From IMG/VR virus record IMGVR_UViG_3300029908_000004, positions 1 through 64,000 of that record: a stretch of 64,000 nucleotides of DNA. One strand, 5' to 3'. Within the stretch, counting starts at the first letter, position 1, and every line of letters begins with the position of its first letter. Positions 26,145-59,502 of this stretch are shown piece after piece. The notes under the pieces are model-generated. The model was not told the DNA's origin. It was given only the letters and a program-made list of their open reading frames with translations, and searched no databases. Made by a program: the position numbers and the translations under genes.

Positions 26145-26347
26145 TGGTGCTCACGGCGAGATTCGAACTCGCGACCCACACATTAGATTGTGTGTCTAAG
26201 TAGCTATAACGCGCTTTCCTACACATTTCAGTGATAGGAGTTAATCCTATCTCGGTTACGATGTACCTTTCGGGGCCTCCGCAACTCACTACCTATGACG
26301 AGCTTCCTAAGTTTGCTCCGCTCTTTCCATTCTAAGCTATCGTGAAC
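26145..26347 (-). ncRNA. 203-nt tRNA-like RNA: acceptor, D and T arms intact, anticodon region replaced by a long insertion
   Basis: GTTCACG/CGTGAGC-A-CCA acceptor; GCTT..GAGC D arm; GCGAG-TTCGAAT-CTCGC T arm. Confidence 0.7.
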
Positions 26348-31141: not shown

Positions 31142-31218
31142 TGGGAGCCCTAGTAGGATTCGAACCTACCTAATCCATCTACAGTAAACTGTTTAGGAAA
31201 CAGTGCTGGTATAGGGCC
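31142..31218 (-). tRNA. D-armless tRNA-Arg(CCT)-like RNA with a long variable region
   Basis: GGCCCTA/TAGGGCT acceptor; only TACCAGC before ACTGT-TT CCT AA-ACAGT; canonical T arm; CCA. Confidence 0.65.
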
Positions 31219-33862: not shown

Positions 33863-33889
33863 TGGCTCCGACTTAGGGATTCGAACCCC
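33863..33889 (-). pseudogene. Orphan tRNA 3' end (Gln-like)
   Basis: GGGGTTCGAATCCCTAAGTCGGAGCCA. Confidence 0.65.
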
Positions 33890-33900
33890 AATAAACAGCT

Positions 33901-35330: not shown

Positions 35331-35933
35331 TTAATTCTTTAACACAGCCCAAGCGTTTACTAATGTTTCAAATGTTTCTTCTACCCTAGTAATCTTAGAA
35401 ACTCTTGGTACTTCCTTAAGATCTTTTATAGCTTCCTCATGGGCTAGCAAAGCTTCTAGTAGCCTCTGATCAACTTCAGAACGCCTGTCAAGTGCTATTA
35501 CCTCTGGCTTCATACCTCTATCCATTGCTAGATTAGCTAATGAATCGGCATGTTTATTCTGTTCTCTAGGTACCCACTTCAATGTAAGATTAACTCCAAG
35601 CTTCTTCAGCTTGGCCATTCTAATACGGGCTGCTTTGTATAGCTCTAATAAGTCTACACTTTTAACATTCCAGTTACCGCTCAGTTGCTCGATTATTAGC
35701 TTGGAATCAGAGTGAACTACAACAATATTATAGTTCATTTCTATAGCATAATCCAGAGCTCTAATAAGTGCTGTGTACTCGGCATAGTTATTACTTTTAT
35801 CTTTAAGATAGTCGCTCTTCTCAAGGATACAAGTCTTCTTATTACCCTCTACAAGTATACCTGATACGCCTATCCCTGCTGCTCCCGGGTTAGCTCTTGA
35901 ACCACCATCACAGTAGAGCCAAAGCTCAGGCAT
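35331..35933 (-). CDS. rnhA: Ribonuclease HI
   Basis: YCDGGSRANPG.AGIG...NNYAEYTAL...HSDSKL...WVPREQNKHADSLAN. Confidence 0.93.
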   Translation of the reverse strand: MPELWLYCDGGSRANPGAAGIGVSGILVEGNKKTCILEKSDYLKDKSNNYAEYTALIRALDYAIEMNYNIVVVHSDSKLIIEQLSGNWNVKSVDLLELYKAARIRMAKLKKLGVNLTLKWVPREQNKHADSLANLAMDRGMKPEVIALDRRSEVDQRLLEALLAHEEAIKDLKEVPRVSKITRVEETFETLVNAWAVLKN

Positions 35934-36796: not shown

Positions 36797-37029
36797 TTGT
36801 GTCCGTTTTTACAAGAACCAACCTTCGTTTTGGTTTGACATACGACTTGTGGATTCGTTTCAGGACGAGCTGGGTTACATGATGCGGGGGACTCACTTGG
36901 ACAATGAGGACAGTAGCTAACTATTCTCATTCTACCTCTTGCTCCTCCCGGGGAACTATGCGCTCTACCATTCATTTGTTTCAACTTACGTTTCGTAACC
37001 GTTGAATGTTTAACTACCCCTGCTGCCAT
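36778..37029 (-). CDS. Small Cys-containing hypothetical protein
   Basis: CPHC...C...CKNGH. Confidence 0.5.
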   Translation of the reverse strand: MAAGVVKHSTVTKRKLKQMNGRAHSSPGGARGRMRIVSYCPHCPSESPASCNPARPETNPQVVCQTKTKVGSCKNGHKWKIHI

Positions 37030-37056
37030 ATTTTCCTTCCCTGTGTTAAGTCATAC

Positions 37057-37191
37057 GGATATAGTTTGAACAAGATGTTTTTCGATGCTACCATTACACC
37101 AAGCTGGCATAAATTATTAAATGGTGCCAGCCCTGGGATTTGAACCCAGACCCGTTCGTTATGAGTGAAGATAACCTTGCTCTGTCGACCC
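37057..37191 (-). ncRNA. YrlA-like Y RNA 1 (permuted tRNA-like domain)
   Basis: GGGTCGA-N8-GGTTATC, then T arm CTGGG-TTCAAAT-CCCAG, acceptor GGCTGGC/GCCAGCT closed by a loop, D arm GTGT-AATGGTA-GCAT, and 3' CTTGTTCAAACTATATCC pairing with the 5' end. Confidence 0.85.
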
Positions 37192-37214
37192 GTATGATTT
37201 GAATTTAATGATGA

Positions 37215-37348
37215 GGATATGGGGTGGAATTGGGTAAGCCTTTCGGCTGACGGATGTTCTACCATTTGAACTACATCCACTCGATTGAATGGAAGATTGG
37301 ACTCGAACCAATAACATTCTGTTTGAGATAACCAATTTCTATCGACCC
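37215..37348 (-). ncRNA. YrlA-like Y RNA 2
   Basis: GGGTCGA-N8-GGTTATC; ATTGG-TTCGAGT-CCAAT; acceptor hairpin; GTTC-AAATGGTA-GAAC; 3' CCAATT...ATATCC. Confidence 0.85.
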
Positions 37349-37359
37349 TCATCTAATAC

Positions 37360-37824
37360 TTATTGTGTAGCTTCCTTTTCGTTCCTTGATGGTGAGGTGC
37401 ACTCCTTGCGCGTGTTGGCCACCATCTCCTCGTACATGTGACCAAGCTGCTCTGATTCTTGGGCATGAGCTTCTGCCACTTCATCTACCACTACAGCTTC
37501 TGCCTGTGGTTGAGTACGTGGTGTCTTCAGCCAAAGAAGAGCAGCTTCCTGCGTACGCTGTGGGAACTTATCGTAACACAAGATTGCAGAAAGGATATTT
37601 ACTTTGATATCCCCTTCAACCTTTACAGTATCAGAGAGCCAGCTACCATTGGTCAGTCTTGATACAGCGATATGACGCCCCAACTTCTTGTTGAAACAAT
37701 CCTTTGGGTTGTGTGTGGAAACGGCGAAGATAGCTTCGTCTTCGGTCTGGGTATAAGCAACGCAAGCAACGGGGAAGCGATTCTCGTTGCGAAGAGAAAA
37801 TACCTTTACTGTTGGTTCAGTCAT
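37360..37824 (-). CDS. Conserved phage hypothetical protein
   Basis: 154 aa with SD; FAVSTHNPKDCFNKKLGRHIA motif. Confidence 0.65.
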   Translation of the reverse strand: MTEPTVKVFSLRNENRFPVACVAYTQTEDEAIFAVSTHNPKDCFNKKLGRHIAVSRLTNGSWLSDTVKVEGDIKVNILSAILCYDKFPQRTQEAALLWLKTPRTQPQAEAVVVDEVAEAHAQESEQLGHMYEEMVANTRKECTSPSRNEKEATQ

Positions 37825-39127: not shown

Positions 39128-39156
39128 TGGCGGTAGAGAGGAGAGTCGAACTCCTA
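39128..39156 (-). pseudogene. Orphan tRNA 3' end (Ser-like, G73)
   Basis: TTAGGAGTTCGACTCTCCTCTCTACCGCCA, just downstream of tRNA-Ser(TGA). Confidence 0.6.
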
Positions 39157-40936: not shown

Positions 40937-40966
40937 TGGAGCTATCGAAGAGTCTCGAACTCTTGA
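40937..40966 (-). pseudogene. Degenerate tRNA 3' part
   Basis: AAGAG-TTCGAGA-CTCTT-CGATAGC-T-CCA with no matching 5' acceptor or D arm. Confidence 0.5.
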
Positions 40967-44559: not shown

Positions 44560-44781
44560 ATGAACGATAATTTGATTAAAATCTGCCGTAAATGTAAAAT
44601 CCCTAAAGATCGTGACGAATTCCCGTGGAAGAACAAATCCAAAGGAATTCGCCATAATACTTGTAAGCATTGTACACGGGACTATAGTGAAAACTATTAC
44701 AAGTCAAATCAAAATGAACTATCAGAGAAAGCTAAACTACACCAAAGGGAGAAAAGAGCTGCTAAACCAAATGTGGTTTAA
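44560..44781 (+). pseudogene. Truncated antisense homing endonuclease (N-terminal zinc finger only; HEG5)
   Basis: KICRKCKIPK...EF...TCKHC; promoter TATACTATATA at 44534-44544 and SD GAGGTG; no nuclease domain. Confidence 0.65.
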
Positions 44782-46502
44782 GCTTCTAATTCCTTCTCTC
44801 GTGGTTCAGCATCATAGCTATCAATAGACAGTTTCATGTCCTCAGAGAACTTTATAGCCACTTCTACTGATCTCTTGATATCTCCTATTCTAATCTCACG
44901 ACCATTATCTGCCCGAGCTAGTGTTTGTGACAAACGGATGGCATTTTTGATTTGTCGTCCGTTTAGATTATAAACACTCATCTCTTTCGACCACTGTGCA
45001 TTCATTTTGGCCGCTTCTAGTAGGTTGTACCAGATTTTCTCTCTCTTTTCCTGTCCGTTGTTACAGAAATGAAGTGCTACAGAGATGCGGCTATAAAATG
45101 CCTTATCAATATTCTTGACACGATTGGTGGTAAGGAAAAGTACTCCGTTGTGATATTCTAGCAAACGAAGGAAAACACCAACCATAGCATTTCTTTCGAT
45201 GTCGTGCTCATCACGAGCTTCCAAGAAGATATCTGCCTCATCCAGAAGGATAACAGCATCCCAAATCGTTGCTACCTCCAAGATATTGCGTAAATGAGAT
45301 TCCAAGTGTTCTGTATCTGTTCCCAATTCTCCTACTGAGACTGAATACAGTGGCTTGTGAAGAATTTCTGCAACTGCTTCAGCAGAAGCAGTTTTACCTA
45401 ACCCCGGTTCTCCATGAAGCAGGAAGATGCAGCCTCCACCTTTACCTTCAATGATATCGGTGAATCCGCCACCATGGTATTTAACCAGAGAGTAAATCAA
45501 ATCCTTACTGTCTTGATCCAACACCAGTCGATCAAAAGCATCCTCACGGAAATTGATCTCGCTCAAGCCAGAAAGTCTTAGACGTCCCCATTCCTTAACT
45601 TGTAAGCTAAACCCCAGAAGATATGGATAACAGCGCCAATAGTCTTCTTCTTTTAACTTGGTTTCATCTTTTTGGGTAACTTCTACTTCATCGTCGTCTT
45701 CCAAATTGATACCCAACATACGTCCACATTGGCCCCAAACGTCAGGTTTTAATCTGGAGAAGGAAACTGGATCGATTACCACACGACCAGAAGCTCTCGT
45801 TATCTTGTTCCCGAGCCAACTTGGTGATATCATGTTGCCTTCGTAATGAAGGTACCTACCCGGTTTAGACATTGATAGAATCTTCTCTCCACGTTCGGAC
45901 ATGGACTTCTTCTCAGAGTCAGTGACCAACCGAATTGGTAACGAACTAATTGGTACGCTACCCGGGAATCCGTTTATTCCGAATGAATAATCATTCTCCA
46001 CGATTTTGCCGCATAACCCATGTATAACCCTTAGGGAGATCCTGAATACAGGACCCATCCATGTATAATCTATTCTTGACTTCCTGACGATACCACCAAT
46101 GGCTTCTTCCCCTTGGATAACAACTTCTTTCTCTTCTGGGAAATATCTTATCATATCGTTAAGGGTAAGAACTCCGTTATCGATTCTTGCTAAGAATAAT
46201 TTCTCTAACAATTCCCCCATCGACTGAATATATTTATAAAGGTCTTTACCCTTTTTGTCAGTTTTCAGCGATGTCCCCTCGTTTGATACATAGCCGTGAT
46301 AAAACTGACACAATACATAGATAGGGTATCTATGACGATATATAATTGCGGCTTCGTAATCCCATACTTTTGTTAGATCGCTAAACACTAAAGTCTTTAT
46401 ATATTGGTCTTTAACAGATCGGAAACAGACCACTTCTTCACCAGAAATATCAAGAATTGTGTAGAAGTCTGTTGCATTAATTAATTTCTCTGCGATTTCC
46501 AT
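44778..46502 (-). CDS. AAA+ ATPase
   Basis: LLHGEPGLGKTASAEAVAE, ILLDEADIFLE, LFLTTNRV..IDKAFYSRI; start placed at MEIAEK because the longer frame overlaps two tRNAs. Confidence 0.88.
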   Translation of the reverse strand: MEIAEKLINATDFYTILDISGEEVVCFRSVKDQYIKTLVFSDLTKVWDYEAAIIYRHRYPIYVLCQFYHGYVSNEGTSLKTDKKGKDLYKYIQSMGELLEKLFLARIDNGVLTLNDMIRYFPEEKEVVIQGEEAIGGIVRKSRIDYTWMGPVFRISLRVIHGLCGKIVENDYSFGINGFPGSVPISSLPIRLVTDSEKKSMSERGEKILSMSKPGRYLHYEGNMISPSWLGNKITRASGRVVIDPVSFSRLKPDVWGQCGRMLGINLEDDDEVEVTQKDETKLKEEDYWRCYPYLLGFSLQVKEWGRLRLSGLSEINFREDAFDRLVLDQDSKDLIYSLVKYHGGGFTDIIEGKGGGCIFLLHGEPGLGKTASAEAVAEILHKPLYSVSVGELGTDTEHLESHLRNILEVATIWDAVILLDEADIFLEARDEHDIERNAMVGVFLRLLEYHNGVLFLTTNRVKNIDKAFYSRISVALHFCNNGQEKREKIWYNLLEAAKMNAQWSKEMSVYNLNGRQIKNAIRLSQTLARADNGREIRIGDIKRSVEVAIKFSEDMKLSIDSYDAEPREKELEA

Positions 46503-46519
46503 ACGAATTGTCCTTTTCT

Positions 46520-46595
46520 TGGAGCTGGTGACCGAAGTCGAATCGATAACCTCTACTTTACGAAAGTATTGCTCTTCCAATTGAGCTACACCAGC
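46520..46595 (-). tRNA. tRNA-Thr(CGT)
   Basis: TACT-TT CGT AA-AGTA; CCA. Confidence 0.88.
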
Positions 46596-46604
46596 GTTGA
46601 TATC

Positions 46605-46689
46605 TGGAGCGAGAGACGGGATTTGAACCCGCATGTCTTTCAACGGTAGCTTGGAAGGCTACTGACCAACCGAGTAGGTCATCTCCCGC
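46605..46689 (-). tRNA. tRNA-Gly(TCC) with a long variable arm
   Basis: GTAGC-CT TCC AA-GCTAC; variable region CGTTGAAAGACAT; U73; CCA. Confidence 0.82.
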
Positions 46690-48929: not shown

Positions 48930-49260
48930 AGGTAGACCCTAACCCGGTTAATCAACTAAGAAGATTAACAATACGCTGGGGCAGAAACACTGGCTAGGCT
49001 GGAAATCATCCAGGCTGGCAGAGTGTCGATACCAACAGCGTTTACGTTAACAGTTTTGCCTGTTATTGTTGTATAGTCGTTTAACGTGAGCCTATAGCAC
49101 GACCTGTCATTATTTGCAATTCATACCAAGCGAACCCGGGAGCGGCCCCTATGGTGGACACTCGGGATTCAACCTCCGTGCCCTTATAATTGGTGGACCG
49201 CGAGGGAGTTGAACCCTCGTTAATGGTCATGCTTACAAATAAATCATACAGGTTTAACCG
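48930..49260 (-). ncRNA. ssrA: Circularly permuted two-piece tmRNA
   Basis: The acceptor piece (49260-49191: T arm GAGGG-TTCAACT-CCCTC, GCGGTCC-A-CCA) precedes the coding piece starting GGGCCGC at 49148 (G3:U70). Helix 2 TTGCAAATAA/TTATTTGTAA; pk1-like element; AATAACA-GGC resume context; tag ORF 49060-48965. Confidence 0.85.
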
Positions 49261-49950: not shown

Positions 49951-50213
49951 GGATATAATTGGAATTGGATATTTCGGATATCTTAGTCCAGCAAACATCA
50001 CCAGCGTCAAATATCCTACACCTTTATGTGGTCAAAGGTAACCGCACTGACTTCTCAATACTAGTAGTGTCTTAACCAGACACAGGCTTATAACTATTTA
50101 ACCTCTGTGTTTGCTATTCTTTCAAATAGCTCTTCTCTATCAGAGAAGGTTTAATTGTCCCCGAGGTAACGGGTACTTGCACGGTTATAGAGATAACCAA
50201 GTTCCGGCGACCC
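49951..50213 (-). ncRNA. Long Y-RNA-family member (about 263 nt)
   Basis: GGGTCGC-N8-GGTTATC at the 5' end; GGAACTTGG pairs with the 3' CCAATTCC; ends TATATCC; several internal hairpins. Confidence 0.65.
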
Positions 50214-50223
50214 ACCAAAGGTC

Positions 50224-50394
50224 TTAATGCTTTATTGTTACTCCTGCTGTGTTTACAAAACCTAATAACACGGTTAGAGCCCAGAAGAATAACCCCCAAG
50301 CTAGCATATTAAATCTAGGATTGGGGAAATTAACACCACAAGCTGCGATCAATAAACAAACCACAGCTAAAATCATTAGAACTAAACCTACCAT
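50224..50394 (-). CDS. Small membrane protein with two transmembrane helices (56 aa)
   Basis: MVGLVLMILAVVCLLIAACGVNFPNPRFNMLAWGLFFWALTVLLG... Confidence 0.65.
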   Translation of the reverse strand: MVGLVLMILAVVCLLIAACGVNFPNPRFNMLAWGLFFWALTVLLGFVNTAGVTIKH

Positions 50395-50445
50395 TGTAAA
50401 ACCCCCATATTTACCTTCTAGAGGTTCAACGAACGTAGTTTGTTG

Positions 50446-50667
50446 TTATTGCAATCCAAGTAGTGGAAGTTTTGCTCCACCACTCTTACCTCTTGTCTTC
50501 TTGCCGGGCTTGAACTTAGCCTTGGCATATCTGACAGAGGGTGGGTATGCTTTCATTACCCTTTCACGATGAGCTTCACGTTCAGCTGCCTTACGAAGTC
50601 TCGTAGCTTCTTTCTGCTCTTCAGTCCTTGGGAGATGTACAGTTTCTCCATTCACTCGACAGCGCAT
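50446..50667 (-). CDS. Small basic protein
   Basis: 73 aa, K/R-rich; SD AAGGAG. Confidence 0.55.
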   Translation of the reverse strand: MRCRVNGETVHLPRTEEQKEATRLRKAAEREAHRERVMKAYPPSVRYAKAKFKPGKKTRGKSGGAKLPLLGLQ

Positions 50668-50709
50668 ATGTAGCTCCTTTTAATGTTTGGAACTATTTAT
50701 TCATCTCTC

Positions 50710-50784
50710 GGATATGGATTGACAAAGGTATTGCCTGCACGCAGGCTGTCATTTTAATTGTAGATAACCTTTATACTTCGACCC
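50710..50784 (-). ncRNA. Short Y-RNA-family member
   Basis: GGGTCGA-N8-GGTTATC...CCTTTGTCAATCCATATCC; ends pair. Confidence 0.8.
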
Positions 50785-50802
50785 GAGATTCTTTGTTGCT
50801 TA

Positions 50803-50904
50803 AGATGTAGATTGATAAGGGAATGCCTTTTCCCGAGATGGATCCGGGAACCACTGTAGGCAACAGCTAGCTTGCGCTTTTAGATAACCCTTGTCGTTCG
50901 ACCC
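50803..50904 (-). ncRNA. Y-RNA-family member
   Basis: GGGTCGA-N8-GGTTATC...CCCTTATCAATCTACATCT. Confidence 0.8.
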
Positions 50905-50926
50905 TAAGCGGAATTTATATTGTTAT

Positions 50927-51026
50927 GGATATGGATTGATAAGGTTATGCCTTATTTGGGTATCGAAACCCGCTGCAGGCGACAGTTAGACTTTCGTCCA
51001 TCCAGATAATCCTCGTCGGTCGACCC
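50927..51026 (-). ncRNA. Y-RNA-family member with a T-loop-like hairpin
   Basis: GGGTCGA-N8-GATTATC...GGGTTTCGATACCC...CCTTATCAATCCATATCC. Confidence 0.8.
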
Positions 51027-51044
51027 ATAACAAAGTTGTTAAAA

Positions 51045-51188
51045 CTACTTCTTTTTACCACCCTTACCACGGTTACCACCAACGGTTGTGGTGGCTGTCT
51101 TGTTCAATGACTCGAAGCCGCCCTTTTTACTTGGTTTGCCAGTGCTACCGATCTTACCCTGACCCGGATCTTTACCCTTGTGAATCAT
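51045..51188 (-). CDS. Gly/Lys-rich basic peptide (47 aa)
   Basis: MIHKGKDPGQGKIGSTGKPSKKGGFESLNKTATTTVGGNRGKGGKKK; SD upstream. Confidence 0.55.
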   Translation of the reverse strand: MIHKGKDPGQGKIGSTGKPSKKGGFESLNKTATTTVGGNRGKGGKKK

Positions 51189-51219
51189 CGTACTCTCCCT
51201 TATTTGTACTACTTAATAT

Positions 51220-51240
51220 TGGTGGACCCAGCGAGAATTG
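51220..51240 (-). pseudogene. 3' fragment of the original tRNA-Ala
   Basis: CAATTCTCGC-TGGGTCC-A-CCA (U70) pairs with the 5' fragment GGGCTCT. Confidence 0.72.
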
Positions 51241-51283
51241 CACCTTTGTAAATGTTATACTATATAGATACGAAAGGATTTGT

Positions 51284-51362
51284 TGGTGGATCGTATGAGA
51301 ATCGAACTCATCTGAAATCTTCTTTGCAAAAGAAGTGACCACCCCGTGCAGTCCCACAACCC
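51284..51362 (-). tRNA. tRNA-Ala(TGC), replacement copy
   Basis: CTTCT-TT TGC AA-AGAAG; G3:U70; CCA. Confidence 0.88.
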
Positions 51363-51368
51363 ATTTAT

Positions 51369-51899
51369 ATGCCAATTCGTAACTGTTTATATTGTAACAA
51401 ACTATTTGATGCTCCACAACGTGATATTACCAGAGGTAATGGTAAATACTGTTCCAGGAAATGCTCTGGAAACTATAAGAGCTCTCTTCCTAGTAAAGCT
51501 CCTATTATAGAGCTTACTTGTGCTTATTGTAATAGTACATTTACTAAGCCTTCCAGATACGTTAGAAAAGCCAATTCTAGAAGCGGATTGCGCTTTTGTA
51601 ACCGTAAGTGTAAAGAACTTGGACAGCGATTAGACGGTGGTAACATAAAAGCTATACAACCATCTCATTTTGGCACAGGTACCGGAGAACACCATTATAG
51701 AGCAAAAGCTCTAAACGCATTCCCAAATAAGTGTAATAGATGTGGATATGATGAATTAATAGGGATCCTTGTTGTACACCACAAGGATCGTAACCGTTCC
51801 AATTCTCATCTATCAAACTTAGAGATTCTGTGCCCAAATTGTCACGCTAAAGAACATTACATTAATCACGATGGATCGTATAGCTCAAAGAGAAAATGA
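51369..51899 (+). mobile_element. Antisense HNH homing endonuclease gene (HEG6)
   Basis: CNRCG...VHHKDRNRSNSHLSNLEILCPNCHAKEH; CSRKC repeats; promoter motif at 51256-51266. Confidence 0.9.
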
Positions 51900-51900
51900 T

Positions 51901-51944
51901 GCTGCTTTGCAAGAGCATTGCTCTCCCGAATGAGCTAAGAGCCC
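51901..51944 (-). pseudogene. 5' fragment of the original tRNA-Ala(TGC)
   Basis: GGGCTCTTAGCTCATTCGGGAGAGCAATGCTCTTGCAAAGCAG, abutting the HEG6 stop codon. Confidence 0.8.
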
Positions 51945-52284
51945 ACGTCGTGCTTTCCTATTTAGTATACCACCAAATGTTGGAAAACACTAGAATCTTT
52001 AATCTCTTTCTCTTTCTCTTTCGCGACTCAACGCCTTCTGTTCGCGAGACCACCAGAACTTCCATGAAACACTTCTACCATCGTAGTACCAGCCAAGCGC
52101 TTTCAAACGTTCGTACGTTTCTGGTGAGGTTCCTGTCTTCTTAAGTTCTTCTGGCATTTTCTTTTCCTCATCTTGGGATTTTAGTGGAGTAGCCCGGCTA
52201 TCCGCGTCGGGCTACCCCGGTTAATTTGATGTCAAACCTAAATGGTTTTAACAAATTACGGTAGTTGTATAAACACGTGTCTGG

Positions 52285-52465
52285 AACTACGATTGTTTAC
52301 GTTAATCTCGGTGCTTTACCATTGAGCTACTCAGGCATATGTTTTGGGGCCCGAGGAGAGCATCGAACTCTCATACCCGATTTTGAAAGAAATCGTCTAC
52401 CAGATGTTGTTTCTACCAAGTGAACCTCTTGGGTAATAGATTAACGTTAAACTTAATCGTTTATT
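52285..52465 (-). ncRNA. Permuted tRNA-like RNA with a long closing stem and no GGGUCGA motif
   Basis: T arm GAGAG-TTCGATG-CTCTC, CTCGGGC-C-CCA, short linker, GCCTGAG, D arm GCTC-AATGGTA-AAGC; flanks ACGTTAATCT/AGATTAACGT pair. Confidence 0.7.
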
Positions 52466-52790
52466 TAACCTGACCCTGAGGTTGAAAGAATCCTTGCGGA
52501 CTCTTCCCAAGCTTGTTAGTTATTAGCCACTTTGTCTTTGTACTTAAGACCGGGCTTATTGCGTTTGTCCATCTTTTTCTTTGCTGATGCAATGTGTTTC
52601 TGCTTGTTACTGAACTTCATTGTACCACCTCTATAAAACATTTCTCCTACGGCAAGAAGACGAATCTTCTAGGTGGTAACATCGCATTAAACCCACGACT
52701 CTTGTTGGTTATGACCCAACCTCCGTTTACTACGTCCGTGCGACTAGTTCGTAGCGACCTCGGGGATTCCGTCCTATAGGAGAAAACTTA

Positions 52791-53549
52791 TTATGCTAAT
52801 GGAACAAGGATATAATCCATCAGCTTCTTGCCAATCTTTGAGCTTGATACGTCAATGTCCTGCTCATTGGCGCGGGCTCTTGCCTTCTTGACGAATCTTG
52901 ACAGGTTTTCAACCCTCTCCAGAAGTGAAGCTTTCATAACTGGAGTCAACATTGAGGACCATTCCTGAGTTCTCAATAGACCTGTTGCAATGGTTTCTTC
53001 CAGAATTTGACACTGTGCTGGATGTTTGTCTGTAGCCGGGTACAGAACTAGTGGTTTCTTTACAAGTGTTTTGCGCTCTGATTCCACGTCTCTCGCTTGA
53101 TAGATTCCTACTGAGCGGTTATCGTCTTGCTTGAACCCTTTTGTTGGATCAAGTGTTGGAATAGCTGTCAGAAGAACCTGAACTTCCTTCAACCTCTTTT
53201 CCAACTGCAATAGACTTGTGGCGGGGACATCCTTCAGGATTGTGTTTCCGTCATCGTCTACCACATCTGCTCTTGCTTGAGTATTTGCTACATCAACCTG
53301 ATGTGACAGGTCAATACTCTTGATCTGGAATGCCGACCACCACAACAGTTCATCTTTCACTGTTGTCTGAATCTCTGACACTTCCTCGATCTTGACTGGT
53401 GCACCTTCTGTATAAGCAGAGTAGGTCTTACGAATCTCACTGAAATGAGATCTTTTCTTCTCGAAGGTGGCCTCTAATTCAGTCCGTGTTTTTGCGGCTT
53501 GATTTTCCAAATTCTTCTCAACCGCTAGTAACTCATGTAGCTTTGGCAT
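52791..53549 (-). CDS. Conserved phage coiled-coil protein
   Basis: MPKLHELLAVEK...VPATSLLQLEK...IPTLDP...YPATDKHPAQ...KKARARAN. Confidence 0.8.
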   Translation of the reverse strand: MPKLHELLAVEKNLENQAAKTRTELEATFEKKRSHFSEIRKTYSAYTEGAPVKIEEVSEIQTTVKDELLWWSAFQIKSIDLSHQVDVANTQARADVVDDDGNTILKDVPATSLLQLEKRLKEVQVLLTAIPTLDPTKGFKQDDNRSVGIYQARDVESERKTLVKKPLVLYPATDKHPAQCQILEETIATGLLRTQEWSSMLTPVMKASLLERVENLSRFVKKARARANEQDIDVSSSKIGKKLMDYILVPLA

Positions 53550-53610
53550 ATCTGAACCTCACTTGGGTTTCTCTTTGTAAGTTTGAGTTTAGTTAAAAGG
53601 GCATGGTACT

Positions 53611-53844
53611 TTAGTACATGTCCTGATCTTGTGGTGATATAAAAGGAGGAGGTGGTGCGCCCGGTTCCCCAGTGGCTAATGCATTGCGACCAGCAGCTAA
53701 GATAATACGAATTTCTTGTATTACTCTCCAGTTCTCGTATGAGAATCTTTGAGCTGCTGTTTGGTCGTATTCAGTCATTACTTCTTCTATCATATCAAAC
53801 TGAATACGATTAAATGTTACTGTAATCTGTTCTTCCTGTCCCAT
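53611..53844 (-). CDS. Hypothetical protein
   Basis: 77-aa ORF. Confidence 0.55.
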   Translation of the reverse strand: MGQEEQITVTFNRIQFDMIEEVMTEYDQTAAQRFSYENWRVIQEIRIILAAGRNALATGEPGAPPPPFISPQDQDMY

Positions 53845-53872
53845 TTTACCTTTGTTTAGAATTGCAGATTGT

Positions 53873-54016
53873 CTAGATATTTCTGCCAGAGAATAGCCCT
53901 ATCATTAATACTATAAAGGCTAGTACTAGTAAAAGGTGGATTAAACCGCCTGCTATATGGAGACCGAAACCAAGTAACCATAAAAATAGTAAAATTATTA
54001 ATATCGTCCAAAGCAT
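53873..54016 (-). CDS. lmo0937/DUF5670-like small membrane protein (47 aa)
   Basis: MLWTILIILLFLWLLGFGLHIAGGLIHLLLVLAFIVLMIGLFSGRNI. Confidence 0.8.
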   Translation of the reverse strand: MLWTILIILLFLWLLGFGLHIAGGLIHLLLVLAFIVLMIGLFSGRNI

Positions 54017-54068
54017 ATGAATCCTTCACGTTATTGTAGGGTGGTTCCCCACCCTACAATGTTGAATG

Positions 54069-54224: not shown

Positions 54225-54235
54225 CTGTTACTCCT

Positions 54236-54895: not shown

Positions 54896-54974
54896 TGTTC
54901 TCCATTGCTACTAATAAAAGCTCAATGGCTTTCACTTGTTTCAGTCCTACATGTTTAATTAGTATACGATAATT

Positions 54975-56067: not shown

Positions 56068-56116
56068 AAACTCCTTTGTTTGGCATGGGCACGAGGGCGG
56101 AGATAGAACTAAGTTT

Positions 56117-56143: not shown

Positions 56144-56166
56144 TGAGTCCTGATACTTAAATTCTT

Positions 56167-56986: not shown

Positions 56987-58687
56987 TTACTCCGCTTCTG
57001 CTTCTTCAGTTTCCAATACTTCCGTTTTCCCTGAAACGAATTGGGCAATCAACGAAGGCACATTGGTATCGAATCCAACCACGTCCAACGAACGTACATC
57101 GTTTGGATCTGCGATCGAGAATCCAGTTGCTGTCATCCCGATGACAATCTGATGAGCGTTACGTCCAGAACTCTGACGATAGCTCTCCAAAGCGCTAAAT
57201 ACGTGTTTAGGTCCTGCCCAAGTCTCGTTGTCAGTGATGTTGACAAACACATCGACTGGCATCTTCTTTTCTTGTGCATCCTTATATGGAAGTGAACAAT
57301 CTGTTCCTCCCCACCCTGTGCGTAGTGCCTTGGATATTGCTGCGTCTAGCTTCATGGATTTAACCAATCCAACATCAATCATCTTGGTGTTGTAGGAAGC
57401 AACGTGATGCCATGGCTCATTATGCATGATTACCATAGCCATTGCTACTGCACCCATGATTGGTGACATGTTTGGACAACCAACAAGATTTCCCCATCCC
57501 ATTGAGCCGGAACAATCCAAGCCAATGTAATAGTTCAAATTGGTGGTTTCAGCATTCTTAAACGTCTTATAGAACGCTGCGTCCATAGCATCCAAAACTG
57601 GTTTCACCACTGTCCAAGTCAACGAGCCACGAATGCCATGACCAGTTTGATAGGTTAACATAGCATTCAGAACAGTTAGTGGGTGAACACGACTACGTTG
57701 CAGATATTCCTGATCCGACAGACGTGTTACTACTAGCTTTGACGCCTCTGATAGAGGAGCTAACAGCTTGATGCTACTCATCTTACCAAGGTTCCTGATC
57801 ATTGCGTTCATGGGCATTTTCTGAAGCAATGCCTCCCAAACTGCAACGTGGTTCAATGCCTCTGTAGGGATCATTTCGCGAGTGAGGTTGTACTTCTGAA
57901 TCGCTGAAATGATTACCTTTGGGTCTTTTTCATTCTTCATTGCCTCGAACTGCTTAATCAGTTCTGGCAAGTCCTTCTCTAAATCGGTTGCTCCGTGCAG
58001 ACCTTTGGTAGCCCAATCAAACAAGGCTTTCTGCCCATTCGACAACGTAGCATGGGTACCTGCATGGGTGGCACGAAGGATGTCGCGATGGCTCCATCCT
58101 TGTGTTCCATCCACACGCCGTGATTGGTATTTCACCATCTGATAAGCCAGTTTCTGCTCATCTTTCTGTGTGTACCAATCTGCTACGCCGTTGCGTAGTG
58201 ACCTATTCCAACGCATCTTTGCGGCACCTTCGGCCTGTTTTGACCGCATGCCTTTCAGATATTCCATTAGTTGGAACAAATGCGTTCCGATACGTGCTAC
58301 GTCTGGCAGTTTATCCAAGGCGTAACCACGAGTGGATTTGTCACCGAATGCTATACACTGTGCCAACGCGAACAGGGCATAGTCATTCTTTGGAGCCCGG
58401 CCAGATACAGAGATATCGACAATCGTTTTTACTGTCTTCTCTCCATCTGCCGAAATACAGCGTTCAACGCACTTTGCGTTGTCACGCGTCAACTTGTCGG
58501 CACCAACATAATAAGTGCCACCTTCGCTTCCAAGAATTATAAATCTCTGGAGTCGGTCCCAGTCACTCAGTTCAAAAACATAACCTCCAGCGTTATTCTG
58601 AACTTGATTCTTTTCTGGGAATGGTTCACTTTGAGGAATTGTTGGCTTCATCGCCCCATACACATTTGTTAGGTTGGGTTTCTTCAT
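56987..58687 (-). CDS. rsr: Ro60/Rsr TROVE-domain RNA-binding protein with a vWA domain
   Basis: QVQNNAGGYVF...DRLQRFIILGSEGGTYY...KYQSR..GWSHRDILRATH...MIRNLGKMS...SRVHPL...LDCSGSM...GGTDCSLP...TDNETW...VVGFDTNVP. Confidence 0.96.
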   Translation of the reverse strand: MKKPNLTNVYGAMKPTIPQSEPFPEKNQVQNNAGGYVFELSDWDRLQRFIILGSEGGTYYVGADKLTRDNAKCVERCISADGEKTVKTIVDISVSGRAPKNDYALFALAQCIAFGDKSTRGYALDKLPDVARIGTHLFQLMEYLKGMRSKQAEGAAKMRWNRSLRNGVADWYTQKDEQKLAYQMVKYQSRRVDGTQGWSHRDILRATHAGTHATLSNGQKALFDWATKGLHGATDLEKDLPELIKQFEAMKNEKDPKVIISAIQKYNLTREMIPTEALNHVAVWEALLQKMPMNAMIRNLGKMSSIKLLAPLSEASKLVVTRLSDQEYLQRSRVHPLTVLNAMLTYQTGHGIRGSLTWTVVKPVLDAMDAAFYKTFKNAETTNLNYYIGLDCSGSMGWGNLVGCPNMSPIMGAVAMAMVIMHNEPWHHVASYNTKMIDVGLVKSMKLDAAISKALRTGWGGTDCSLPYKDAQEKKMPVDVFVNITDNETWAGPKHVFSALESYRQSSGRNAHQIVIGMTATGFSIADPNDVRSLDVVGFDTNVPSLIAQFVSGKTEVLETEEAEAE

Positions 58688-58930: not shown

Positions 58931-58940
58931 CCTACACCCC

Positions 58941-58993
58941 GGATATGATGTTGCATAGGGTTTGTTGTCAAGGTAACCCTACGCGTTCGACCC
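58941..58993 (-). ncRNA. Minimal Y-RNA-family member (53 nt)
   Basis: GGGTCGA-N8-GGTTACC...CCCTATGCAACATCATATCC. Confidence 0.75.
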
Positions 58994-59014
58994 GTGGTCG
59001 AATTTTGTTGCTAT

Positions 59015-59076
59015 GGATATAATACGATTGAAGGCGTTTTTATCTGCAATGATTGATAACCTTCATTCTTCGACCC
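59015..59076 (-). ncRNA. Minimal Y-RNA-family member
   Basis: GGGTCGA-N8-GGTTATC...CCTTCAATCGTATTATATCC. Confidence 0.75.
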
Positions 59077-59096
59077 ATAGCCGATATTAATAGAGT

Positions 59097-59164
59097 GGAT
59101 ATAAACAACTTTGCTGGGATATTGTTTAAATTAGCAGTTTAAGGTAACCCAACGATCTCGACCC
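59097..59164 (-). ncRNA. Minimal Y-RNA-family member
   Basis: GGGTCGA-N8-GGTTACC...CCCAGCAAAGTTGTTTATATCC. Confidence 0.75.
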
Positions 59165-59331
59165 ACTCCATGATTTGATGGTGGAAAGAGGTATTGTATG
59201 TTTGGCCCAACACCGGCCTAGATATATCCGCAGTGCTGGTTTCCTCTCTTACAAATTACCTAGTTCTAGGCACCAAATAACCGTAAGCCACCAAACTTTA
59301 TTACTTCGTTTCAAAATCTTTAATATCTAGT

Positions 59332-59452
59332 AGATATAAATTTGACTGGATGTTTTAGAGTGTCCTGCCAATTAGACGATGCCGGTTACCCGGTAGAGAG
59401 ATTCGAACTCCCATAACCCGCTCCATAGGCGATAACCCAATCGGGTCGACCC
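59332..59452 (-). ncRNA. YrlA-like Y RNA 3
   Basis: GGGTCGA-N8-GGTTATC; GGGAG-TTCGAAT-CTCTC; acceptor hairpin ACCGG-GTAA-CCGG; D arm GTCT-AATTGGC-AGGAC; 3' ATATCT. Confidence 0.85.
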
Positions 59453-59502
59453 ACTAGATAAATTCATTTGCTCCCTAGGAGCGCTTTACATTCTTATGGT
59501 GT

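What the first reader, a model, noticed from the sequence alone, without database searches (positions are those of the whole stretch)
37057..37348. Tandem YrlA-type RNAs: circularly permuted tRNA mimics, one with an encoded CCA
Seen: both RNAs run Y-motif, T arm, acceptor 3' strand, loop, acceptor 5' strand, D arm, Y-motif partner, so the Ro-binding helix takes the place of the anticodon arm. Copy 1 has GGCTGGC-A-CCA inside the acceptor loop. A third copy is at 59332-59452. Known: YrlA RNAs mimic tRNA in this way. Inference: RNase P or 3' trimming could open the loop into a two-piece, possibly chargeable RNA, or these RNAs could act as decoys for anticodon nucleases or T-arm-binding defence proteins.
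Basis: partly seen in the sequence, partly recalled or inferred. Interest (0 to 1): 0.7.

Follow-up and report, generated by a model that had tools for sequence, protein, structure and literature searches.

The report
Phage Y RNAs that mimic pre-tRNAs
Two neighbouring small RNA genes in a 215-kb peat phage are tRNA-shaped Y RNAs, the likely partners of the phage's own Ro60 protein; they belong to a set of at least eleven, and two of the set carry a built-in tRNA-style CCA end, a new twist on a known RNA family.

Summary
RNA A (37353..37210) and RNA B (37196..37052) lie 13 nt apart. Each runs: terminal stem, GUCGAY motif, second helix, GGUUAUC, V arm, T arm, acceptor hairpin, D arm, 3' strand ending AUAUCC. 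RNA C (59457..59327) is a third copy, 640 nt upstream of a full-length Ro60 gene (TROVE plus vWA).

A covariance model built only from 25 RNAs of other phage contigs matches A, B and C end to end (87.6, 77.7 and 74.5 bits). In the 28-sequence alignment 95.7% of pair cells are paired, against 67% in shuffles.

The window holds at least 11 Y RNA genes in four clusters, including a fourth tRNA-like one, D (52404..52280).

B and D have a 7-bp acceptor stem followed at once by N73-CCA. All 30 tRNA genes of this phage also encode CCA. The same NCCA recurs in 5 of 34 related phage Y RNAs, where about 0.5 is expected.

A peat metatranscriptome contig at 15-60 times the depth of its neighbours ends exactly at D's acceptor 3' strand.

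Verdict: these are divergent YrlA-type Y RNAs. The pre-tRNA-like forms with encoded CCA are a new variant. Two-piece processing is plausible, with Mycobacterium smegmatis YrlA as precedent. Charging and decoy roles are untested.

The parts
37210..37353 (-). Y RNA A (144 nt), tRNA-like. Terminal stem 37353-37347 with 37216-37210. GUCGAU 37346-37341. Helix 2 37339-37332 with 37233-37226. UUAUC 37331-37327. T arm 37312-37296. Acceptor 3' strand 37295-37289. Loop UCAAUCGA 37288-37281 (no CCA). Acceptor 5' strand 37280-37274 (6/7 pairs). D arm 37271-37256. Extra GAAA-capped hairpin 37248-37237.
   Evidence: independent model R2 87.6 bits; Rfam YrlA 26.6 bits, below GA 69
37052..37196 (-). Y RNA B (145 nt), pre-tRNA-like. 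Terminal stem 37196-37190 with 37058-37052. GUCGAC 37189-37184. Helix 2 37182-37175 with about 37074-37067. UUAUC 37174-37170. V arm with loop CUCAUAA 37169-37155. T arm 37149-37133. Acceptor 3' strand GGCUGGC 37132-37126. A73-CCA 37125-37122. 13-nt A/U linker 37121-37109. Acceptor 5' strand GCCAGCU 37108-37102 (7/7 pairs, U at -1, G1:C72). D arm 37099-37085.
   Evidence: MFE -44.9, z -4.3; R2 77.7 bits
59327..59457 (-). Y RNA C (131 nt), tRNA-like with a closed acceptor hairpin (CCGG-GUAA-CCGG, 59393-59382). T arm 59412-59396. D arm 59377-59362. V arm UCGC-CUAUGGA-GCGG 59432-59418. Lies 640 nt upstream of rsr on the same strand.
   Evidence: R2 74.5 bits
52280..52404 (-). Y RNA D (125 nt), a divergent tRNA-like Y RNA with motif GACGAU 52397-52392. 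T arm 52372-52356. Acceptor 3' strand CUCGGGC 52355-52349. C73-CCA 52348-52345. 8-nt linker 52344-52337. Acceptor 5' strand GCCUGAG 52336-52330 (7/7). D arm 52327-52313.
   Evidence: Rfam YrlA full-length 26.6 bits; R1 32.2 and R2 29.8 bits full length; X19 RNA contig, depth 209.7, covers 52349-52500
58936..59169 (-). Three short Y RNAs in tandem, 10-11 nt apart: 59169-59092 (78 nt), 59081-59010 (72 nt), 58998-58936 (63 nt). They have the same terminal stem, GUCGAR, GGUUAYC and AUAUCC module, and no tRNA-like domain.
   Evidence: R2 31.5, 32.6 and 27.2 bits
59498..59570 (-). Short Y RNA (73 nt) with GUCGAA ... GAUUACC ... AUAUCC.
   Evidence: (weak YrlB match)
50705..51031 (-). Three Y RNAs in tandem, 8-12 nt apart: 51031-50922 (110 nt, with a T-loop-like GGGUUUCGAUACCC), 50909-50798 (112 nt), 50789-50705 (85 nt).
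   Evidence: R2 27.7, 26.4 and 37.0 bits; all but the first 56 nt of the 51031-50922 RNA is covered by a 1160-nt metatranscriptome contig of run X17 that ends at 50975
50166..50218 (-). Possible degenerate twelfth member (GGUCGCC ... GGUUAUC, no clear AUAUCC end).
   Evidence: R2 16.2 bits, E 0.036
56987..58687 (-). rsr: a phage Ro60 orthologue, 566 aa, TROVE plus Ro60-type vWA domain. It is the presumed protein partner of all these RNAs.
   Evidence: E 1e-95 to 1e-109 to solved Ro60/Rsr structures; about 40% identity to 'Ro-like RNA binding protein' of actinobacteriophages

Best explanation
A and B are two members of a family of at least 11 non-coding Y RNAs encoded by a 215-kb phage from peat, together with its own Ro60 (Rsr) protein.

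Every member has the same Ro60-binding module: a 7-9-bp terminal stem, an internal loop carrying (G)UCGA on the 5' side and AUAU on the 3' side, a second helix, and an invariant GGUUAYC. Each member carries a different middle (effector) module.

In A, B, C and D the middle module is a circularly permuted tRNA: V arm, T arm, acceptor hairpin, D arm. It is predicted to fold into the tRNA L-shape, as in the crystallised Salmonella YrlA.

Shown here: the sequence architecture, the covariation, family membership by an independent model, the co-located Ro60 gene, and presence of the region in RNA libraries.

Inferred:
1. The RNAs are cut out of long polycistronic transcripts together with the neighbouring tRNAs and bind phage Ro60.
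2. B and D have a 7-bp acceptor stem, G1:C72, U at -1 and genomically encoded N73-CCA. They are cleaved by host RNase P at the 5' side of G1 and trimmed back to CCA like this phage's pre-tRNAs. This gives two-piece RNAs held together by the acceptor helix and the Y stem, with a free tRNA-like end. M. smegmatis YrlA does this.
3. The tRNA-like head tethers Ro60 to a tRNA-binding factor or exoribonuclease. Ro60-Y RNA-PNPase complexes, shown for Deinococcus radiodurans, Salmonella and Thermus phage phiLo, are the model. The likely service is tRNA or RNA quality control, or counter-defence, during infection.
For: - Architecture and coordinates.
- Motif count: 10 versus 0.4 expected, all on one strand.
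- Eleven units with complementary, covarying terminal stems.
- Alignment of 28 tRNA-like members: 95.7% of pair cells paired versus 67.3% in shuffles and 46% or less when slid; 21/26 pairs have compensatory changes. The acceptor and D helices were not used for selection.
- Levitt 15:48 covaries: G:C 15, A:U 10, 3 others, of which two are evident mis-parses and one a shifted T stem.
- Model R2, built without window sequences: A 87.6, B 77.7, C 74.5, D 29.8 bits; seven short siblings 26-37 bits.
- Ro60 gene with TROVE plus vWA_Ro60.
- In other phage contigs, arrays of up to 6 such RNAs next to Ro60 homologues.
- CCA: all 30 phage tRNA genes encode CCA. NCCA sits exactly at positions 73-76 in 5/34 well-formed family members and is the commonest trinucleotide there, against about 0.5 expected. 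My Poisson estimate is about 2e-4, and the cases are not fully independent.
- The only two CCA-encoding phages in the set (this one and L130) both have NCCA Y RNAs.
- The phage encodes a CCA-adding-enzyme family protein.
- RNA: X17 contig across Y RNAs at 50.7-51.0 kb. X19 contig at depth 209.7 (others 3-14) covers 52349-52500 and stops at the last base of D's acceptor 3' strand, with nothing over D's 3' half.
Against: - None of the window RNAs reaches Rfam's YrlA gathering score: A and D score 26.6 bits against 69, and B and C gave no match at E <= 10. None of the family members in 16 other loci reaches it either.
- A, B and C have GUCGAY, not the published GNCGAA.
- A and B lie about 20 kb from rsr, outside the 4-kb rule used to define YrlA.
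- No Ro60 binding, modification or RNA-end data exist.
- The metatranscriptome data are assembled contigs. They cannot prove RNA ends or exclude DNA carry-over. They do not cover B or the 3' part of A.
- The D contig also includes 96 nt upstream of D, so D's true 5' end is uncertain. A weaker normal-order tRNA-like reading of 52434..52345 exists (ARAGORN at relaxed threshold).
- No RtcB or PNPase partner was found in the phage: RtcB was searched and is absent, and PNPase was not searched.
Confidence: 0.8

Rival explanations
1. A and B are decaying remnants of tandem tRNA genes, pseudogenes left in a tRNA island, without function. The YrlA resemblance is the known artefact of a T arm of one tRNA followed by the D arm of the next.
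For: The island holds other odd tRNA-like pieces: orphan T arm plus NCCA elements and a true dimeric-tRNA false positive at 46567-46632. B literally has T arm, acceptor 3' strand, ACCA, short spacer, acceptor 5' strand, D arm, like two adjacent CCA-encoding tRNA genes.
Against: - In B and D the two acceptor strands pair 7/7. In the real tRNA dimer they do not (mismatch marks).
- The flanks form a conserved Ro-type module shared with 9 other RNAs, five of them clustered directly upstream of rsr and three more in a second cluster at 50.7-51.0 kb.
- There are end-to-end matches to a model from other phages, with compensatory changes in all helices.
- No close similarity to any of the phage's own tRNAs.
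Confidence: 0.04
2. B and D are circularly permuted genes for working tRNAs, as in the red alga Cyanidioschyzon merolae. The flanking stem directs excision and circularisation, and cutting at the acceptor loop yields a normal tRNA. For B this would be a CAU (Met/Ile2-type) tRNA.
For: 3' half before 5' half. Encoded NCCA directly after a 7-bp acceptor stem. In B, an anticodon-like loop CUCAUAA 5 nt before the T arm. All phage tRNAs encode CCA.
Against: - The flanks are the Y RNA module, not a bulge-helix-bulge splice motif, and are shared with RNAs that have no tRNA part.
- B's V stem has only 3 pairs plus a mismatch. There is a 10-nt linker instead of a 26/27 junction.
- Siblings A and C lack CCA or a 7-bp stem.
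- The phage already has two tRNA-Met(CAU) genes at 64-65 kb.
- No tRNA splicing endonuclease or RtcB ligase was found: RtcB absent, endonuclease not searched.
Confidence: 0.04
3. The stretch is protein-coding: the 112-codon ORF at 37014-37352 on the minus strand spans both RNAs.
For: The ORF exists.
Against: No Pfam family for it or for the overlapping ORFs. Substitutions among relatives are compensatory in helices, not codon-patterned. The same architecture recurs in three other places with no conserved frame.
Confidence: 0.01
4. The RNAs are real Y RNAs, but the encoded CCA is only a fossil of an origin from dimeric tRNA transcripts (the Sim and Wolin model quoted in bioRxiv 10.1101/312249). 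They stay closed-loop and are never cleaved.
For: Most YrlA RNAs are closed-loop (bioRxiv 10.1101/312249). In L181b and L176b the whole loop is only 5-6 nt (ACCAU, CCCAGG), which is tight for RNase P and for free CCA. No RNA-end data for B.
Against: - CCA is enriched at exactly positions 74-76 in lineages with unrelated acceptor sequences, which argues for selection.
- B and D have long A/U linkers with U at -1.
- The abundant D-derived contig stops at the acceptor 3' strand and does not cross the loop.
- M. smegmatis shows that the cleavage happens in vivo (PMC4201824).
Confidence: 0.25

Closest known systems
Salmonella Typhimurium YrlA (Rfam RF02553; crystal structure PDB 6cu1)
   Same: Ro60/Rsr-associated RNA in which T arm, acceptor-like hairpin and D arm appear in permuted order. 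tRNA tertiary pairs including the Levitt pair. A (G)NCGA motif near the 5' end. YUAY/UUAUC ahead of the V region.
   Different: - Window RNAs score 26.6 bits or less against Rfam's gathering score of 69.
- The motif is GUCGAY in A-C.
- There is a separate hairpin V arm with an anticodon-like 7-nt loop, and a 6-10-nt A-rich linker after the D arm instead of a continuous anticodon-stem equivalent.
- Salmonella YrlA has a closed 6-bp acceptor hairpin, no CCA, and is not cut by RNase P.
Mycobacterium smegmatis YrlA (Chen et al. 2014, PMC4201824)
   Same: 7-bp acceptor stem. Cleaved by RNase P in vitro and in vivo into 82-nt and 65-nt halves that both stay with Rsr. The 5' half ends in CCA. This is the direct precedent for the two-piece model of B and D.
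   Different: There CA is added after transcription. In B and D the full N73-CCA is in the gene, followed by an 8-13-nt A/U linker, matching this phage's CCA-encoding tRNA genes. Processing of B and D is not demonstrated.
Thermus phage phiLo Ro60 with Yrl1/Yrl2 (PMC12135203), and the YrlA-like RNAs reported in 22 phages (PMC4201824)
   Same: Phage-encoded Ro60 with Y RNA genes just upstream. Stem, CGA(A)-containing internal loop, stem. Forms a complex with host PNPase in vitro.
   Different: Those phages have one or two Y RNAs. This phage has at least 11, in four clusters spread over 22 kb of a tRNA island, four of them tRNA-like.
Metazoan Y RNAs and nematode stem-bulge RNAs
   Same: Terminal stem plus a Ro-binding 5' strand of GGUC(C)GA type. 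A conserved UUAUC motif, stated for sbRNAs and vertebrate Y RNAs in PMC4726728. A variable middle. One related short phage RNA (L161) reaches the gathering score of Rfam's nematode sbRNA family RF01656.
   Different: No window RNA matched Rfam Y_RNA or the sbRNA families in the stretches scanned at a permissive E-value (36900-37500 and 50100-59600, which hold all twelve RNAs). No bulged-C helix is evident. Homology is undecided.
Two-piece tmRNA from circularly permuted ssrA genes (alpha-proteobacteria, cyanobacteria); cited from general knowledge, not tested here
   Same: A permuted gene order puts the acceptor 3' strand with CCA upstream of the acceptor 5' strand. Processing in the linker gives a two-piece RNA with a chargeable tRNA-like end.
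   Different: tmRNA carries alanine identity (G3:U70) and an mRNA module and works with SmpB. B has C3:G70 and D has C3:G70, there is no tag reading frame, and the partner is Ro60.
Permuted tRNA genes of Cyanidioschyzon merolae; cited from general knowledge
   Same: 3' half encoded before 5' half.
   Different: Those yield ordinary tRNAs through a circular intermediate and eukaryal splicing enzymes. Here the flanks are a Y RNA module.

Membership tests
YrlA-type Y RNA (Chen et al. 2014; Rfam RF02553) | T stem-loop with tRNA T-loop consensus, placed 5' of the D stem-loop | tested here: met
   A AUUGG-UUCGAGU-CCAAU, B CUGGG-UUCAAAU-CCCAG, C GGGAG-UUCGAAU-CUCUC, D GAGAG-UUCGAUG-CUCUC. Each is upstream of a D arm with A14, G18G19 and A21. 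T helix 98.6% paired with 4/5 pairs covarying.
YrlA-type Y RNA (Chen et al. 2014; Rfam RF02553) | Acceptor-like stem-loop between T and D arms | tested here: met
   A 6/7 pairs with an 8-nt loop. B 7/7 with a 17-nt loop. C 4-5 bp with a GUAA loop. D 7/7 with a 12-nt loop. All 8 pairs covary in the family.
YrlA-type Y RNA (Chen et al. 2014; Rfam RF02553) | GNCGAAN0-1G motif near the 5' end (presumed Ro60 contact) | tested here: inconclusive
   A GUCGAUAG, B GUCGACAG, C GUCGACCCG, D GACGAUUU. GNCGA is present but the sixth base is a pyrimidine. Five sibling short RNAs have GUCGAA. GGUCGA is invariant in 28 family members.
YrlA-type Y RNA (Chen et al. 2014; Rfam RF02553) | tRNA tertiary pairs, especially a covarying Levitt pair 15:48 | tested here: met
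   A, B, C and D all have A15 with U48. Across 28 relatives G15:C48 occurs 15 times and A15:U48 10 times. The 3 exceptions are two evident regex mis-parses and one shifted T stem.
YrlA-type Y RNA (Chen et al. 2014; Rfam RF02553) | Encoded within about 4 kb of the Ro60 gene on the same strand | tested here: inconclusive
   C meets it (640 nt upstream of rsr, same strand). D is 4.6 kb downstream. A and B are about 19.6-19.8 kb downstream on the same strand, within one tRNA/Y RNA island.
YrlA-type Y RNA (Chen et al. 2014; Rfam RF02553) | Score at or above Rfam gathering threshold (69 bits) | tested here: not met
   A 26.6 bits (partial, model positions 24-84). D 26.6 bits (full length). B and C not reported at E <= 10. 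None of the Y RNAs in 16 related phage loci reaches it either. So this is a divergent subfamily, not a hit to the curated model.
YrlA-type Y RNA (Chen et al. 2014; Rfam RF02553) | Bound by Rsr/Ro60; carries tRNA modifications (TruB, DusA) | not testable with these tools
   Needs immunoprecipitation or EMSA and modification mapping.
Phage Ro60-linked Y RNA family defined here (models R1 and R2) | End-to-end match to a covariance model built only from other phages' RNAs | tested here: met
   R2: A 87.6 bits (2e-18), B 77.7 (4e-16), C 74.5 (2e-15), D 29.8 (3e-5).
RNase P-cleavable, CCA-ended YrlA (M. smegmatis type) | Seven-base-pair acceptor stem stacked on a 5-bp T stem | tested here: met
   B and D have 7/7 pairs. 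A has 6/7 with a U-U mismatch. C does not qualify.
RNase P-cleavable, CCA-ended YrlA (M. smegmatis type) | Actual cleavage at G1 and a 3' end at CCA in vivo | tested here: inconclusive
   For D, an RNA-library contig at depth 209.7 ends at 52349, the last acceptor 3' base and 4 nt short of the CCA end, and nothing covers the 3' half. Contigs cannot fix RNA ends. There are no data for B.
Circularly permuted tRNA gene (C. merolae type) | Complete tRNA body including a canonical anticodon arm; flanks forming a splice (bulge-helix-bulge) signal | tested here: not met
   B's anticodon-like arm has 3 pairs plus a mismatch. The flanks are the shared Y RNA module. A splice signal was not specifically modelled.
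Metazoan Y RNA / nematode sbRNA (Rfam RF00019, RF01656 and relatives) | Match to the curated models | tested here: not met
   No match for any window RNA at permissive E-values. Only a relative in another phage (L161) touches RF01656's threshold.

The most novel reading that the evidence does not exclude
B- and D-type phage Y RNAs are complete, permuted pre-tRNA mimics: an anticodon-like arm (CUCAUAA in B, the loop sequence of Met/Ile2-type tRNAs), a variable loop, a T arm, a 7-bp acceptor and encoded N73-CCA. RNase P and 3' trimming turn them into two-piece RNAs with a free CCA end while they stay clamped to Ro60.

That end would then be used as a real tRNA end. It could be charged (for B, by MetRS through CAU plus A73), repaired by the phage CCA-adding enzyme, or offered as bait to host tRNA-cleaving or CCA-removing defence nucleases. 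In the bait case Ro60 and a recruited exoribonuclease or the phage's tRNA-repair set would be brought to the site of attack.

The same RNAs would be living intermediates of the proposed origin of YrlA from dimeric tRNA transcripts.
Probability: 0.12. Interest if true: 0.85.

Novelty: new variant of a known kind. Interest (0 to 1): 0.6.

Why it matters
Y RNAs tether Ro60 to effector proteins, but what the tRNA-like head of bacterial YrlA binds is still unknown. [quoted passage not shown]

This phage, and at least four unrelated phage contigs, carry versions with a gene-encoded discriminator plus CCA after a perfect 7-bp acceptor stem. Many versions also have anticodon-loop-like V arms. That makes three open questions directly testable with defined sequences:
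- Are some Y RNAs processed like pre-tRNAs?
- Can they be charged, or recognised by CCA- or anticodon-directed enzymes?
- Did YrlA arise from tandem tRNA transcripts?

The size of the repertoire also matters. There are at least 11 Y RNAs with one shared Ro60-binding module and different heads, inside a block of 30 or more tRNA genes, in a phage that also encodes a CCA-adding enzyme elsewhere in its genome. This suggests that large phages use Ro60 as a multi-adaptor platform for RNA or tRNA quality control or counter-defence. That goes well beyond the one or two Y RNAs described for phages so far.

Tried and rejected
- MAFFT of the four window copies alone (A1) misaligned the arms and was not used.
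- Megablast of the region against GenBank phages found nothing.
- A back-translated Ro60 peptide scan of viral contigs found nothing.
- The first loose DNA pattern returned mostly chance hits. It was filtered by script down to 14 real units.
- The pattern with CTCATAA but without the Y motif was swamped, probably by ordinary tRNA-Met genes: none of its 118 matches has the Y motif. The stricter version showed the CUCAUAA V loop only in B, L181b and L187.
- The closest contig (L166/G001) is 100% identical over 801 nt, so it is the same phage and gives no comparative information.
- The tRNA-like parts of A-D show no close similarity to any of the phage's own tRNAs, so they are not recent copies.
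- A search for trans-encoded 5' halves matching the orphan T-arm/NCCA elements gave only noise.
- Sigma-70 promoter and intrinsic terminator scans around both clusters were at chance level.
- RtcB is absent from the phage. The RNA-ligase family match is below cut-off.
- Pfam gave nothing for the ORFs flanking A and B.
- ARAGORN at relaxed thresholds is too noisy to use.
- Two review papers on bacterial Y RNAs and the supplement of Chen et al. 2014 were not available. The claim that encoded CCA and arrays of 10 or more are undescribed therefore rests on the papers I could read.
Full report
SETTING. The window is the first 64 kb of a 215,291-bp IMG/VR virus record. GC is about 0.40. It recurs in many peat metagenomes and metatranscriptomes. 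From 24 to 65 kb the minus strand carries 30 ARAGORN tRNA genes, plus a tRNA-His seen only by Rfam. All 30 encode the 3' CCA.

THE OBSERVATION. Read on the minus strand, the finding resolves into two units 13 nt apart: A (37353..37210, 144 nt) and B (37196..37052, 145 nt). Each begins and ends with a perfectly complementary 7-nt stem: GAUGAGG/CCUCAUC in A and CAUACGG/CCGUAUG in B. The family alignment extends this stem by an invariant G-U and U-A pair.

Next come GUCGAY, a second helix of 7-8 pairs, an invariant GGUUAUC, a V region, a canonical T arm, an acceptor hairpin, a canonical D arm, a linker, the return strand of helix 2, and ...AUAU before the closing strand.

B has GGCUGGC-A-CCA, then a 13-nt A/U linker ending in U, then GCCAGCU. 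That gives 7/7 pairs, G1:C72 and A73. A has 6/7 pairs and UCAA in place of NCCA.

Its acceptor is a short GUAA-capped hairpin.

MFE folding of the full units returns exactly these structures. B folds at -44.9 kcal/mol (z -4.3, 0 of 200 shuffles as good). A has z -2.4.

MORE COPIES THAN REPORTED. GGTCGAY-N7-GGTTATC with up to two mismatches occurs ten times in the window, always on the minus strand, against 0.4 expected. Extending each hit shows a unit closed by its own complementary stem and preceded on the 3' side by AUAU(C/U). A script scan of the whole genome for the same module found none outside 37-60 kb.

The units fall into four clusters:
- 59570-59498, C, then 59169-59092, 59081-59010 and 58998-58936, all directly upstream of a 566-codon ORF at 58687..56987.
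- 51031-50922, 50909-50798 and 50789-50705.
- A and B.
- A divergent unit D (52404..52280), picked up by Rfam's YrlA model over its full length at 26.6 bits.

D has a T arm, CUCGGGC-C-CCA, an 8-nt linker ending in U, GCCUGAG (7/7) and a textbook D arm. A 53-nt degenerate twelfth candidate lies at 50218-50166.

Spacers of 8-13 nt, together with promoter and terminator hits at chance level, point to processing from long transcripts together with the tRNAs. That is an inference.

THE PROTEIN. The ORF at 56987-58687 has TROVE plus Ro60-type vWA domains. It aligns end to end with solved Ro60/Rsr structures, at E 1e-95 to 1e-109. It is about 40% identical to the 'Ro-like RNA binding protein' of 355 GenBank phages.

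IS IT A FAMILY WITH A CONSERVED STRUCTURE? An exact pattern joining the 5' module to a T loop found 75 viral-contig loci. About half of these loci, most only a few kb long, also hold a Ro60 homologue, often with two to six such RNAs in tandem upstream.

I aligned 25 tRNA-like units from these loci with A, B and C (A3). RNAalifold predicts the terminal stem, T arm, acceptor stem and D arm, and 21 of 26 pairs show double changes.

On the stated structure:
- 95.7% of cells are paired, against 67.3 +/- 1.2% in shuffles (0/500 as high).
- Pairing is 36-46% when the partners are slid.
- The covariation score is 0.80 against 0.23.

My selection required a complementary terminal stem and a T-loop motif, so helix 1 pairs partly by construction and the T loop was selected for. 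The acceptor and D helices were not selected for, and they are 91% and 97% paired with 8/8 and 3/4 covarying pairs.

The Levitt pair switches between G15:C48 and A15:U48, as Chen et al. reported for YrlA. This supports an L-shaped fold.

A model built from the 25 foreign sequences alone (R2) finds A, B and C end to end at 87.6, 77.7 and 74.5 bits, D at 29.8, and seven short siblings at 26-37 bits. Its only other match with E below 0.01 is the known artefact: the T arm of tRNA-Gly followed by the D arm of tRNA-Thr at 46567-46632, whose 'acceptor' does not pair.

RELATION TO PUBLISHED YrlA. Chen et al. 2014 (PMC4201824) define YrlA by several features: a GNCGAAN0-1G motif, T, AS, D and V elements in this order, tRNA tertiary pairs, and a position within 4 kb of Ro60 on the same strand. 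They found it in 254 bacteria and 22 phages.

The window RNAs meet the architectural and tertiary criteria. They miss others:
- They miss the Rfam threshold (26.6 bits or less, against 69).
- A-C have GUCGAY rather than GNCGAA. Five short siblings do have GUCGAA.
- A and B lie about 20 kb from rsr.

I therefore file them as a divergent, phage-borne subfamily of YrlA-type Y RNAs, not as hits to the curated model. None of the family members in 16 other loci reaches Rfam's threshold either.

THE ENCODED CCA. This is the part that is new.
- In 34 non-redundant family members with a 6-7-pair acceptor stem and a D arm, CCA at exactly positions 74-76 occurs five times: L104 C-CCA, L130 G-CCA, L176b C-CCA, L181b A-CCA and B A-CCA.
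- It is the commonest trinucleotide there. CCA at other loop offsets occurs once each. About 0.5 is expected, and my Poisson estimate is about 2e-4. D is a sixth case.
- Three of the cases share a D-arm type, so they are not fully independent, but their acceptor sequences are unrelated.
- Among loci with three or more tRNA genes, only this phage and L130 encode CCA in all tRNA genes, and both have NCCA Y RNAs. Of 37 loci whose tRNA genes mostly lack CCA, two have NCCA Y RNAs. My hypergeometric estimate is about 0.008.
- The phage also encodes a CCA-adding-enzyme family protein at 74.4 kb.

Bacterial RNase P favours a 7-bp acceptor on a 5-bp T stem, U at -1, G1:C72 and RCCA. This is general knowledge of the enzyme. 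B has all of these. D has all but a purine discriminator, since its N73 is C.

The published precedent is M. smegmatis YrlA. It is the one characterised YrlA with a 7-bp stem. It is cut by RNase P in vitro and in vivo, is nibbled and receives CCA, and both halves co-precipitate with Rsr (PMC4201824). What differs is that the mature end is written in the gene.

RNA EVIDENCE. Only assembled contigs of four peat metatranscriptomes could be laid.
- Around A and B they cover the flanking ORFs and tRNA-Lys. One 151-nt record spans 37264-37403, which is 50 nt of upstream sequence plus the first 90 nt of A. Nothing covers B.
- A 1160-nt contig spans tRNA-Asp through the Y RNAs at 50705-50975.
- In run X19 a 152-nt contig at word depth 209.7 covers 52349-52500. 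Other phage contigs in that run have depth 3-14. On the RNA strand this contig runs from 96 nt upstream of D to the very last base of D's acceptor 3' strand, four bases short of the end of CCA. Nothing covers D's linker or 3' half.

This fits an abundant, stable 5' piece ending at or near the tRNA-like 3' end. But contigs cannot define ends, DNA carry-over is not excluded, and the upstream 96 nt form their own stem-loops. D's 5' boundary is therefore unsettled.

THE V ARM. In 28 of 84 non-redundant tRNA-like units, the sequence just after GGUUAUC forms a 4-5-bp stem with a 7-nt loop, U at loop position 2 and a purine at position 6. The loop usually reads CU-NNN-AA and lies 3-7 nt (mostly 4-6) before the T arm. 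These are the proportions of an anticodon arm followed by a variable loop.

B, L181b and L187 share the loop CUCAUAA on different stems. From general knowledge this is the anticodon loop of CAU tRNAs, and two of the three also have A73-CCA.

After the D arm these RNAs have a 6-10-nt A-rich linker rather than a continuous stem. So the Ro module may leave the tRNA body at the 26/27 junction beside an anticodon-arm mimic. This is an inference and needs a 3D model or probing.

The whole layout is what the dimeric-tRNA origin model quoted in bioRxiv 10.1101/312249 predicts for an early intermediate: anticodon-like arm, variable loop, T arm, acceptor 3' strand, NCCA, short spacer, acceptor 5' strand, D arm.

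FUNCTION. Shown: nothing beyond sequence, structure conservation and genomic association.

Inferred, with about 0.8 confidence: all of these RNAs bind the phage Ro60 through the shared module, and their variable heads act as adaptors. This rests on the Ro60-Y RNA-PNPase complexes of Deinococcus and Salmonella (PMC4201824) and on the Thermus phage phiLo Ro60, which binds its two Yrl RNAs and host PNPase (PMC12135203).

Inferred, with about 0.5 confidence: B and D are opened into two-piece RNAs. Charging and decoy roles remain open. The phage lacks RtcB.

NOVELTY. Phage Y RNAs, tRNA mimicry, permuted topology and RNase P opening are all published. I did not find the following in the papers I could read:
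- Gene-encoded N73-CCA in the acceptor loop, recurring across phage lineages and tracking CCA-encoding tRNA genes.
- Anticodon-loop-like V arms.
- A repertoire of at least 11 Y RNAs with one binding module in a single phage.

I rate this a new variant of a known kind, with interest 0.6.

Noticed in passing
An RNA-library contig at 15-60 times the depth of neighbouring phage contigs ends exactly at its acceptor 3' strand.
   Followed up: yes
window 58936-59169, 59498-59570, 50705-51031, 50166-50218 (-): Seven (possibly eight) further Y RNA genes share the same terminal module but carry other middle parts. They sit in tight tandem arrays upstream of rsr and at 50.7-51.0 kb.
   Followed up: yes
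window 52428-52511 (-), and ORF 52517-52620 (-): A structured RNA lies directly upstream of D and inside the abundant metatranscriptome contig. It has a CUUGGG/CCCAAG stem enclosing a GCAA-capped hairpin. A 34-codon basic ORF precedes it. CCCAAG could alternatively pair with D's acceptor 3' strand.
   Followed up: partly
window 33863-33890, 39128-39155, 40937-40964, 49191-49218 (-): Four orphan elements consist of a perfect T arm, a 7-nt acceptor-3'-like strand and NCCA, with no convincing 5' acceptor strand or D arm nearby. At 49.2 kb a complementary heptamer lies 70 nt downstream, and a second ...CCACCA element lies between.
   Followed up: partly
window 26145-26347 (-): A tRNA-like gene has a normal acceptor stem, D arm and T arm but an insertion of about 104-130 nt. 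ARAGORN finds it only with introns allowed.
   Followed up: partly
window 31142-31218 (-): A 77-nt tRNA-Arg(CCU)-like gene has no D arm (7 nt in its place), an 18-nt variable region, a 7-bp acceptor stem and encoded CCA. It is missed by ARAGORN at default settings and by Rfam at gathering score.
   Followed up: partly
window 24058-60032 and genome 64032-65367 (-): All 30 tRNA genes encode CCA. Most other Y RNA-bearing phage loci examined encode none. The phage also has a CCA-adding-enzyme family ORF at genome 74375-74752 (outside the window).
   Followed up: yes
window 46567-46632 (-): The junction of tRNA-Gly and tRNA-Thr, 9 nt apart, scores 33 bits on the Y RNA models. This is the dimeric-tRNA false positive that Chen et al. 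warned about: its pseudo-acceptor does not pair.
   Followed up: yes
L177:4034-4170 (-): In another phage, a Y RNA with the same end module carries D arm, anticodon-like arm and T arm in the normal (non-permuted) tRNA order. The Y stem takes the place of the acceptor stem.
   Followed up: no
L161:10034-10103 (-): A short Y RNA of another phage reaches the gathering score of Rfam RF01656, a nematode stem-bulge RNA family (38.4 against 38 bits). The invariant UUAUC of the phage family is also the motif described as conserved in sbRNAs and vertebrate Y RNAs.
   Followed up: partly
L194:2652-3050 (+): A phage-encoded tmRNA lies beside a Y RNA and a block of about 16 tRNA genes in another viral contig.
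   Followed up: no
window 54975-55373, 52791-53549, 35331-35933, 44778-46643 (-): Protein genes scattered through the tRNA/Y RNA island include a NifU-like Fe-S scaffold, a DUF7873 protein, an RNase H-like protein and an AAA ATPase. Most other ORFs have no Pfam family.
   Followed up: partly
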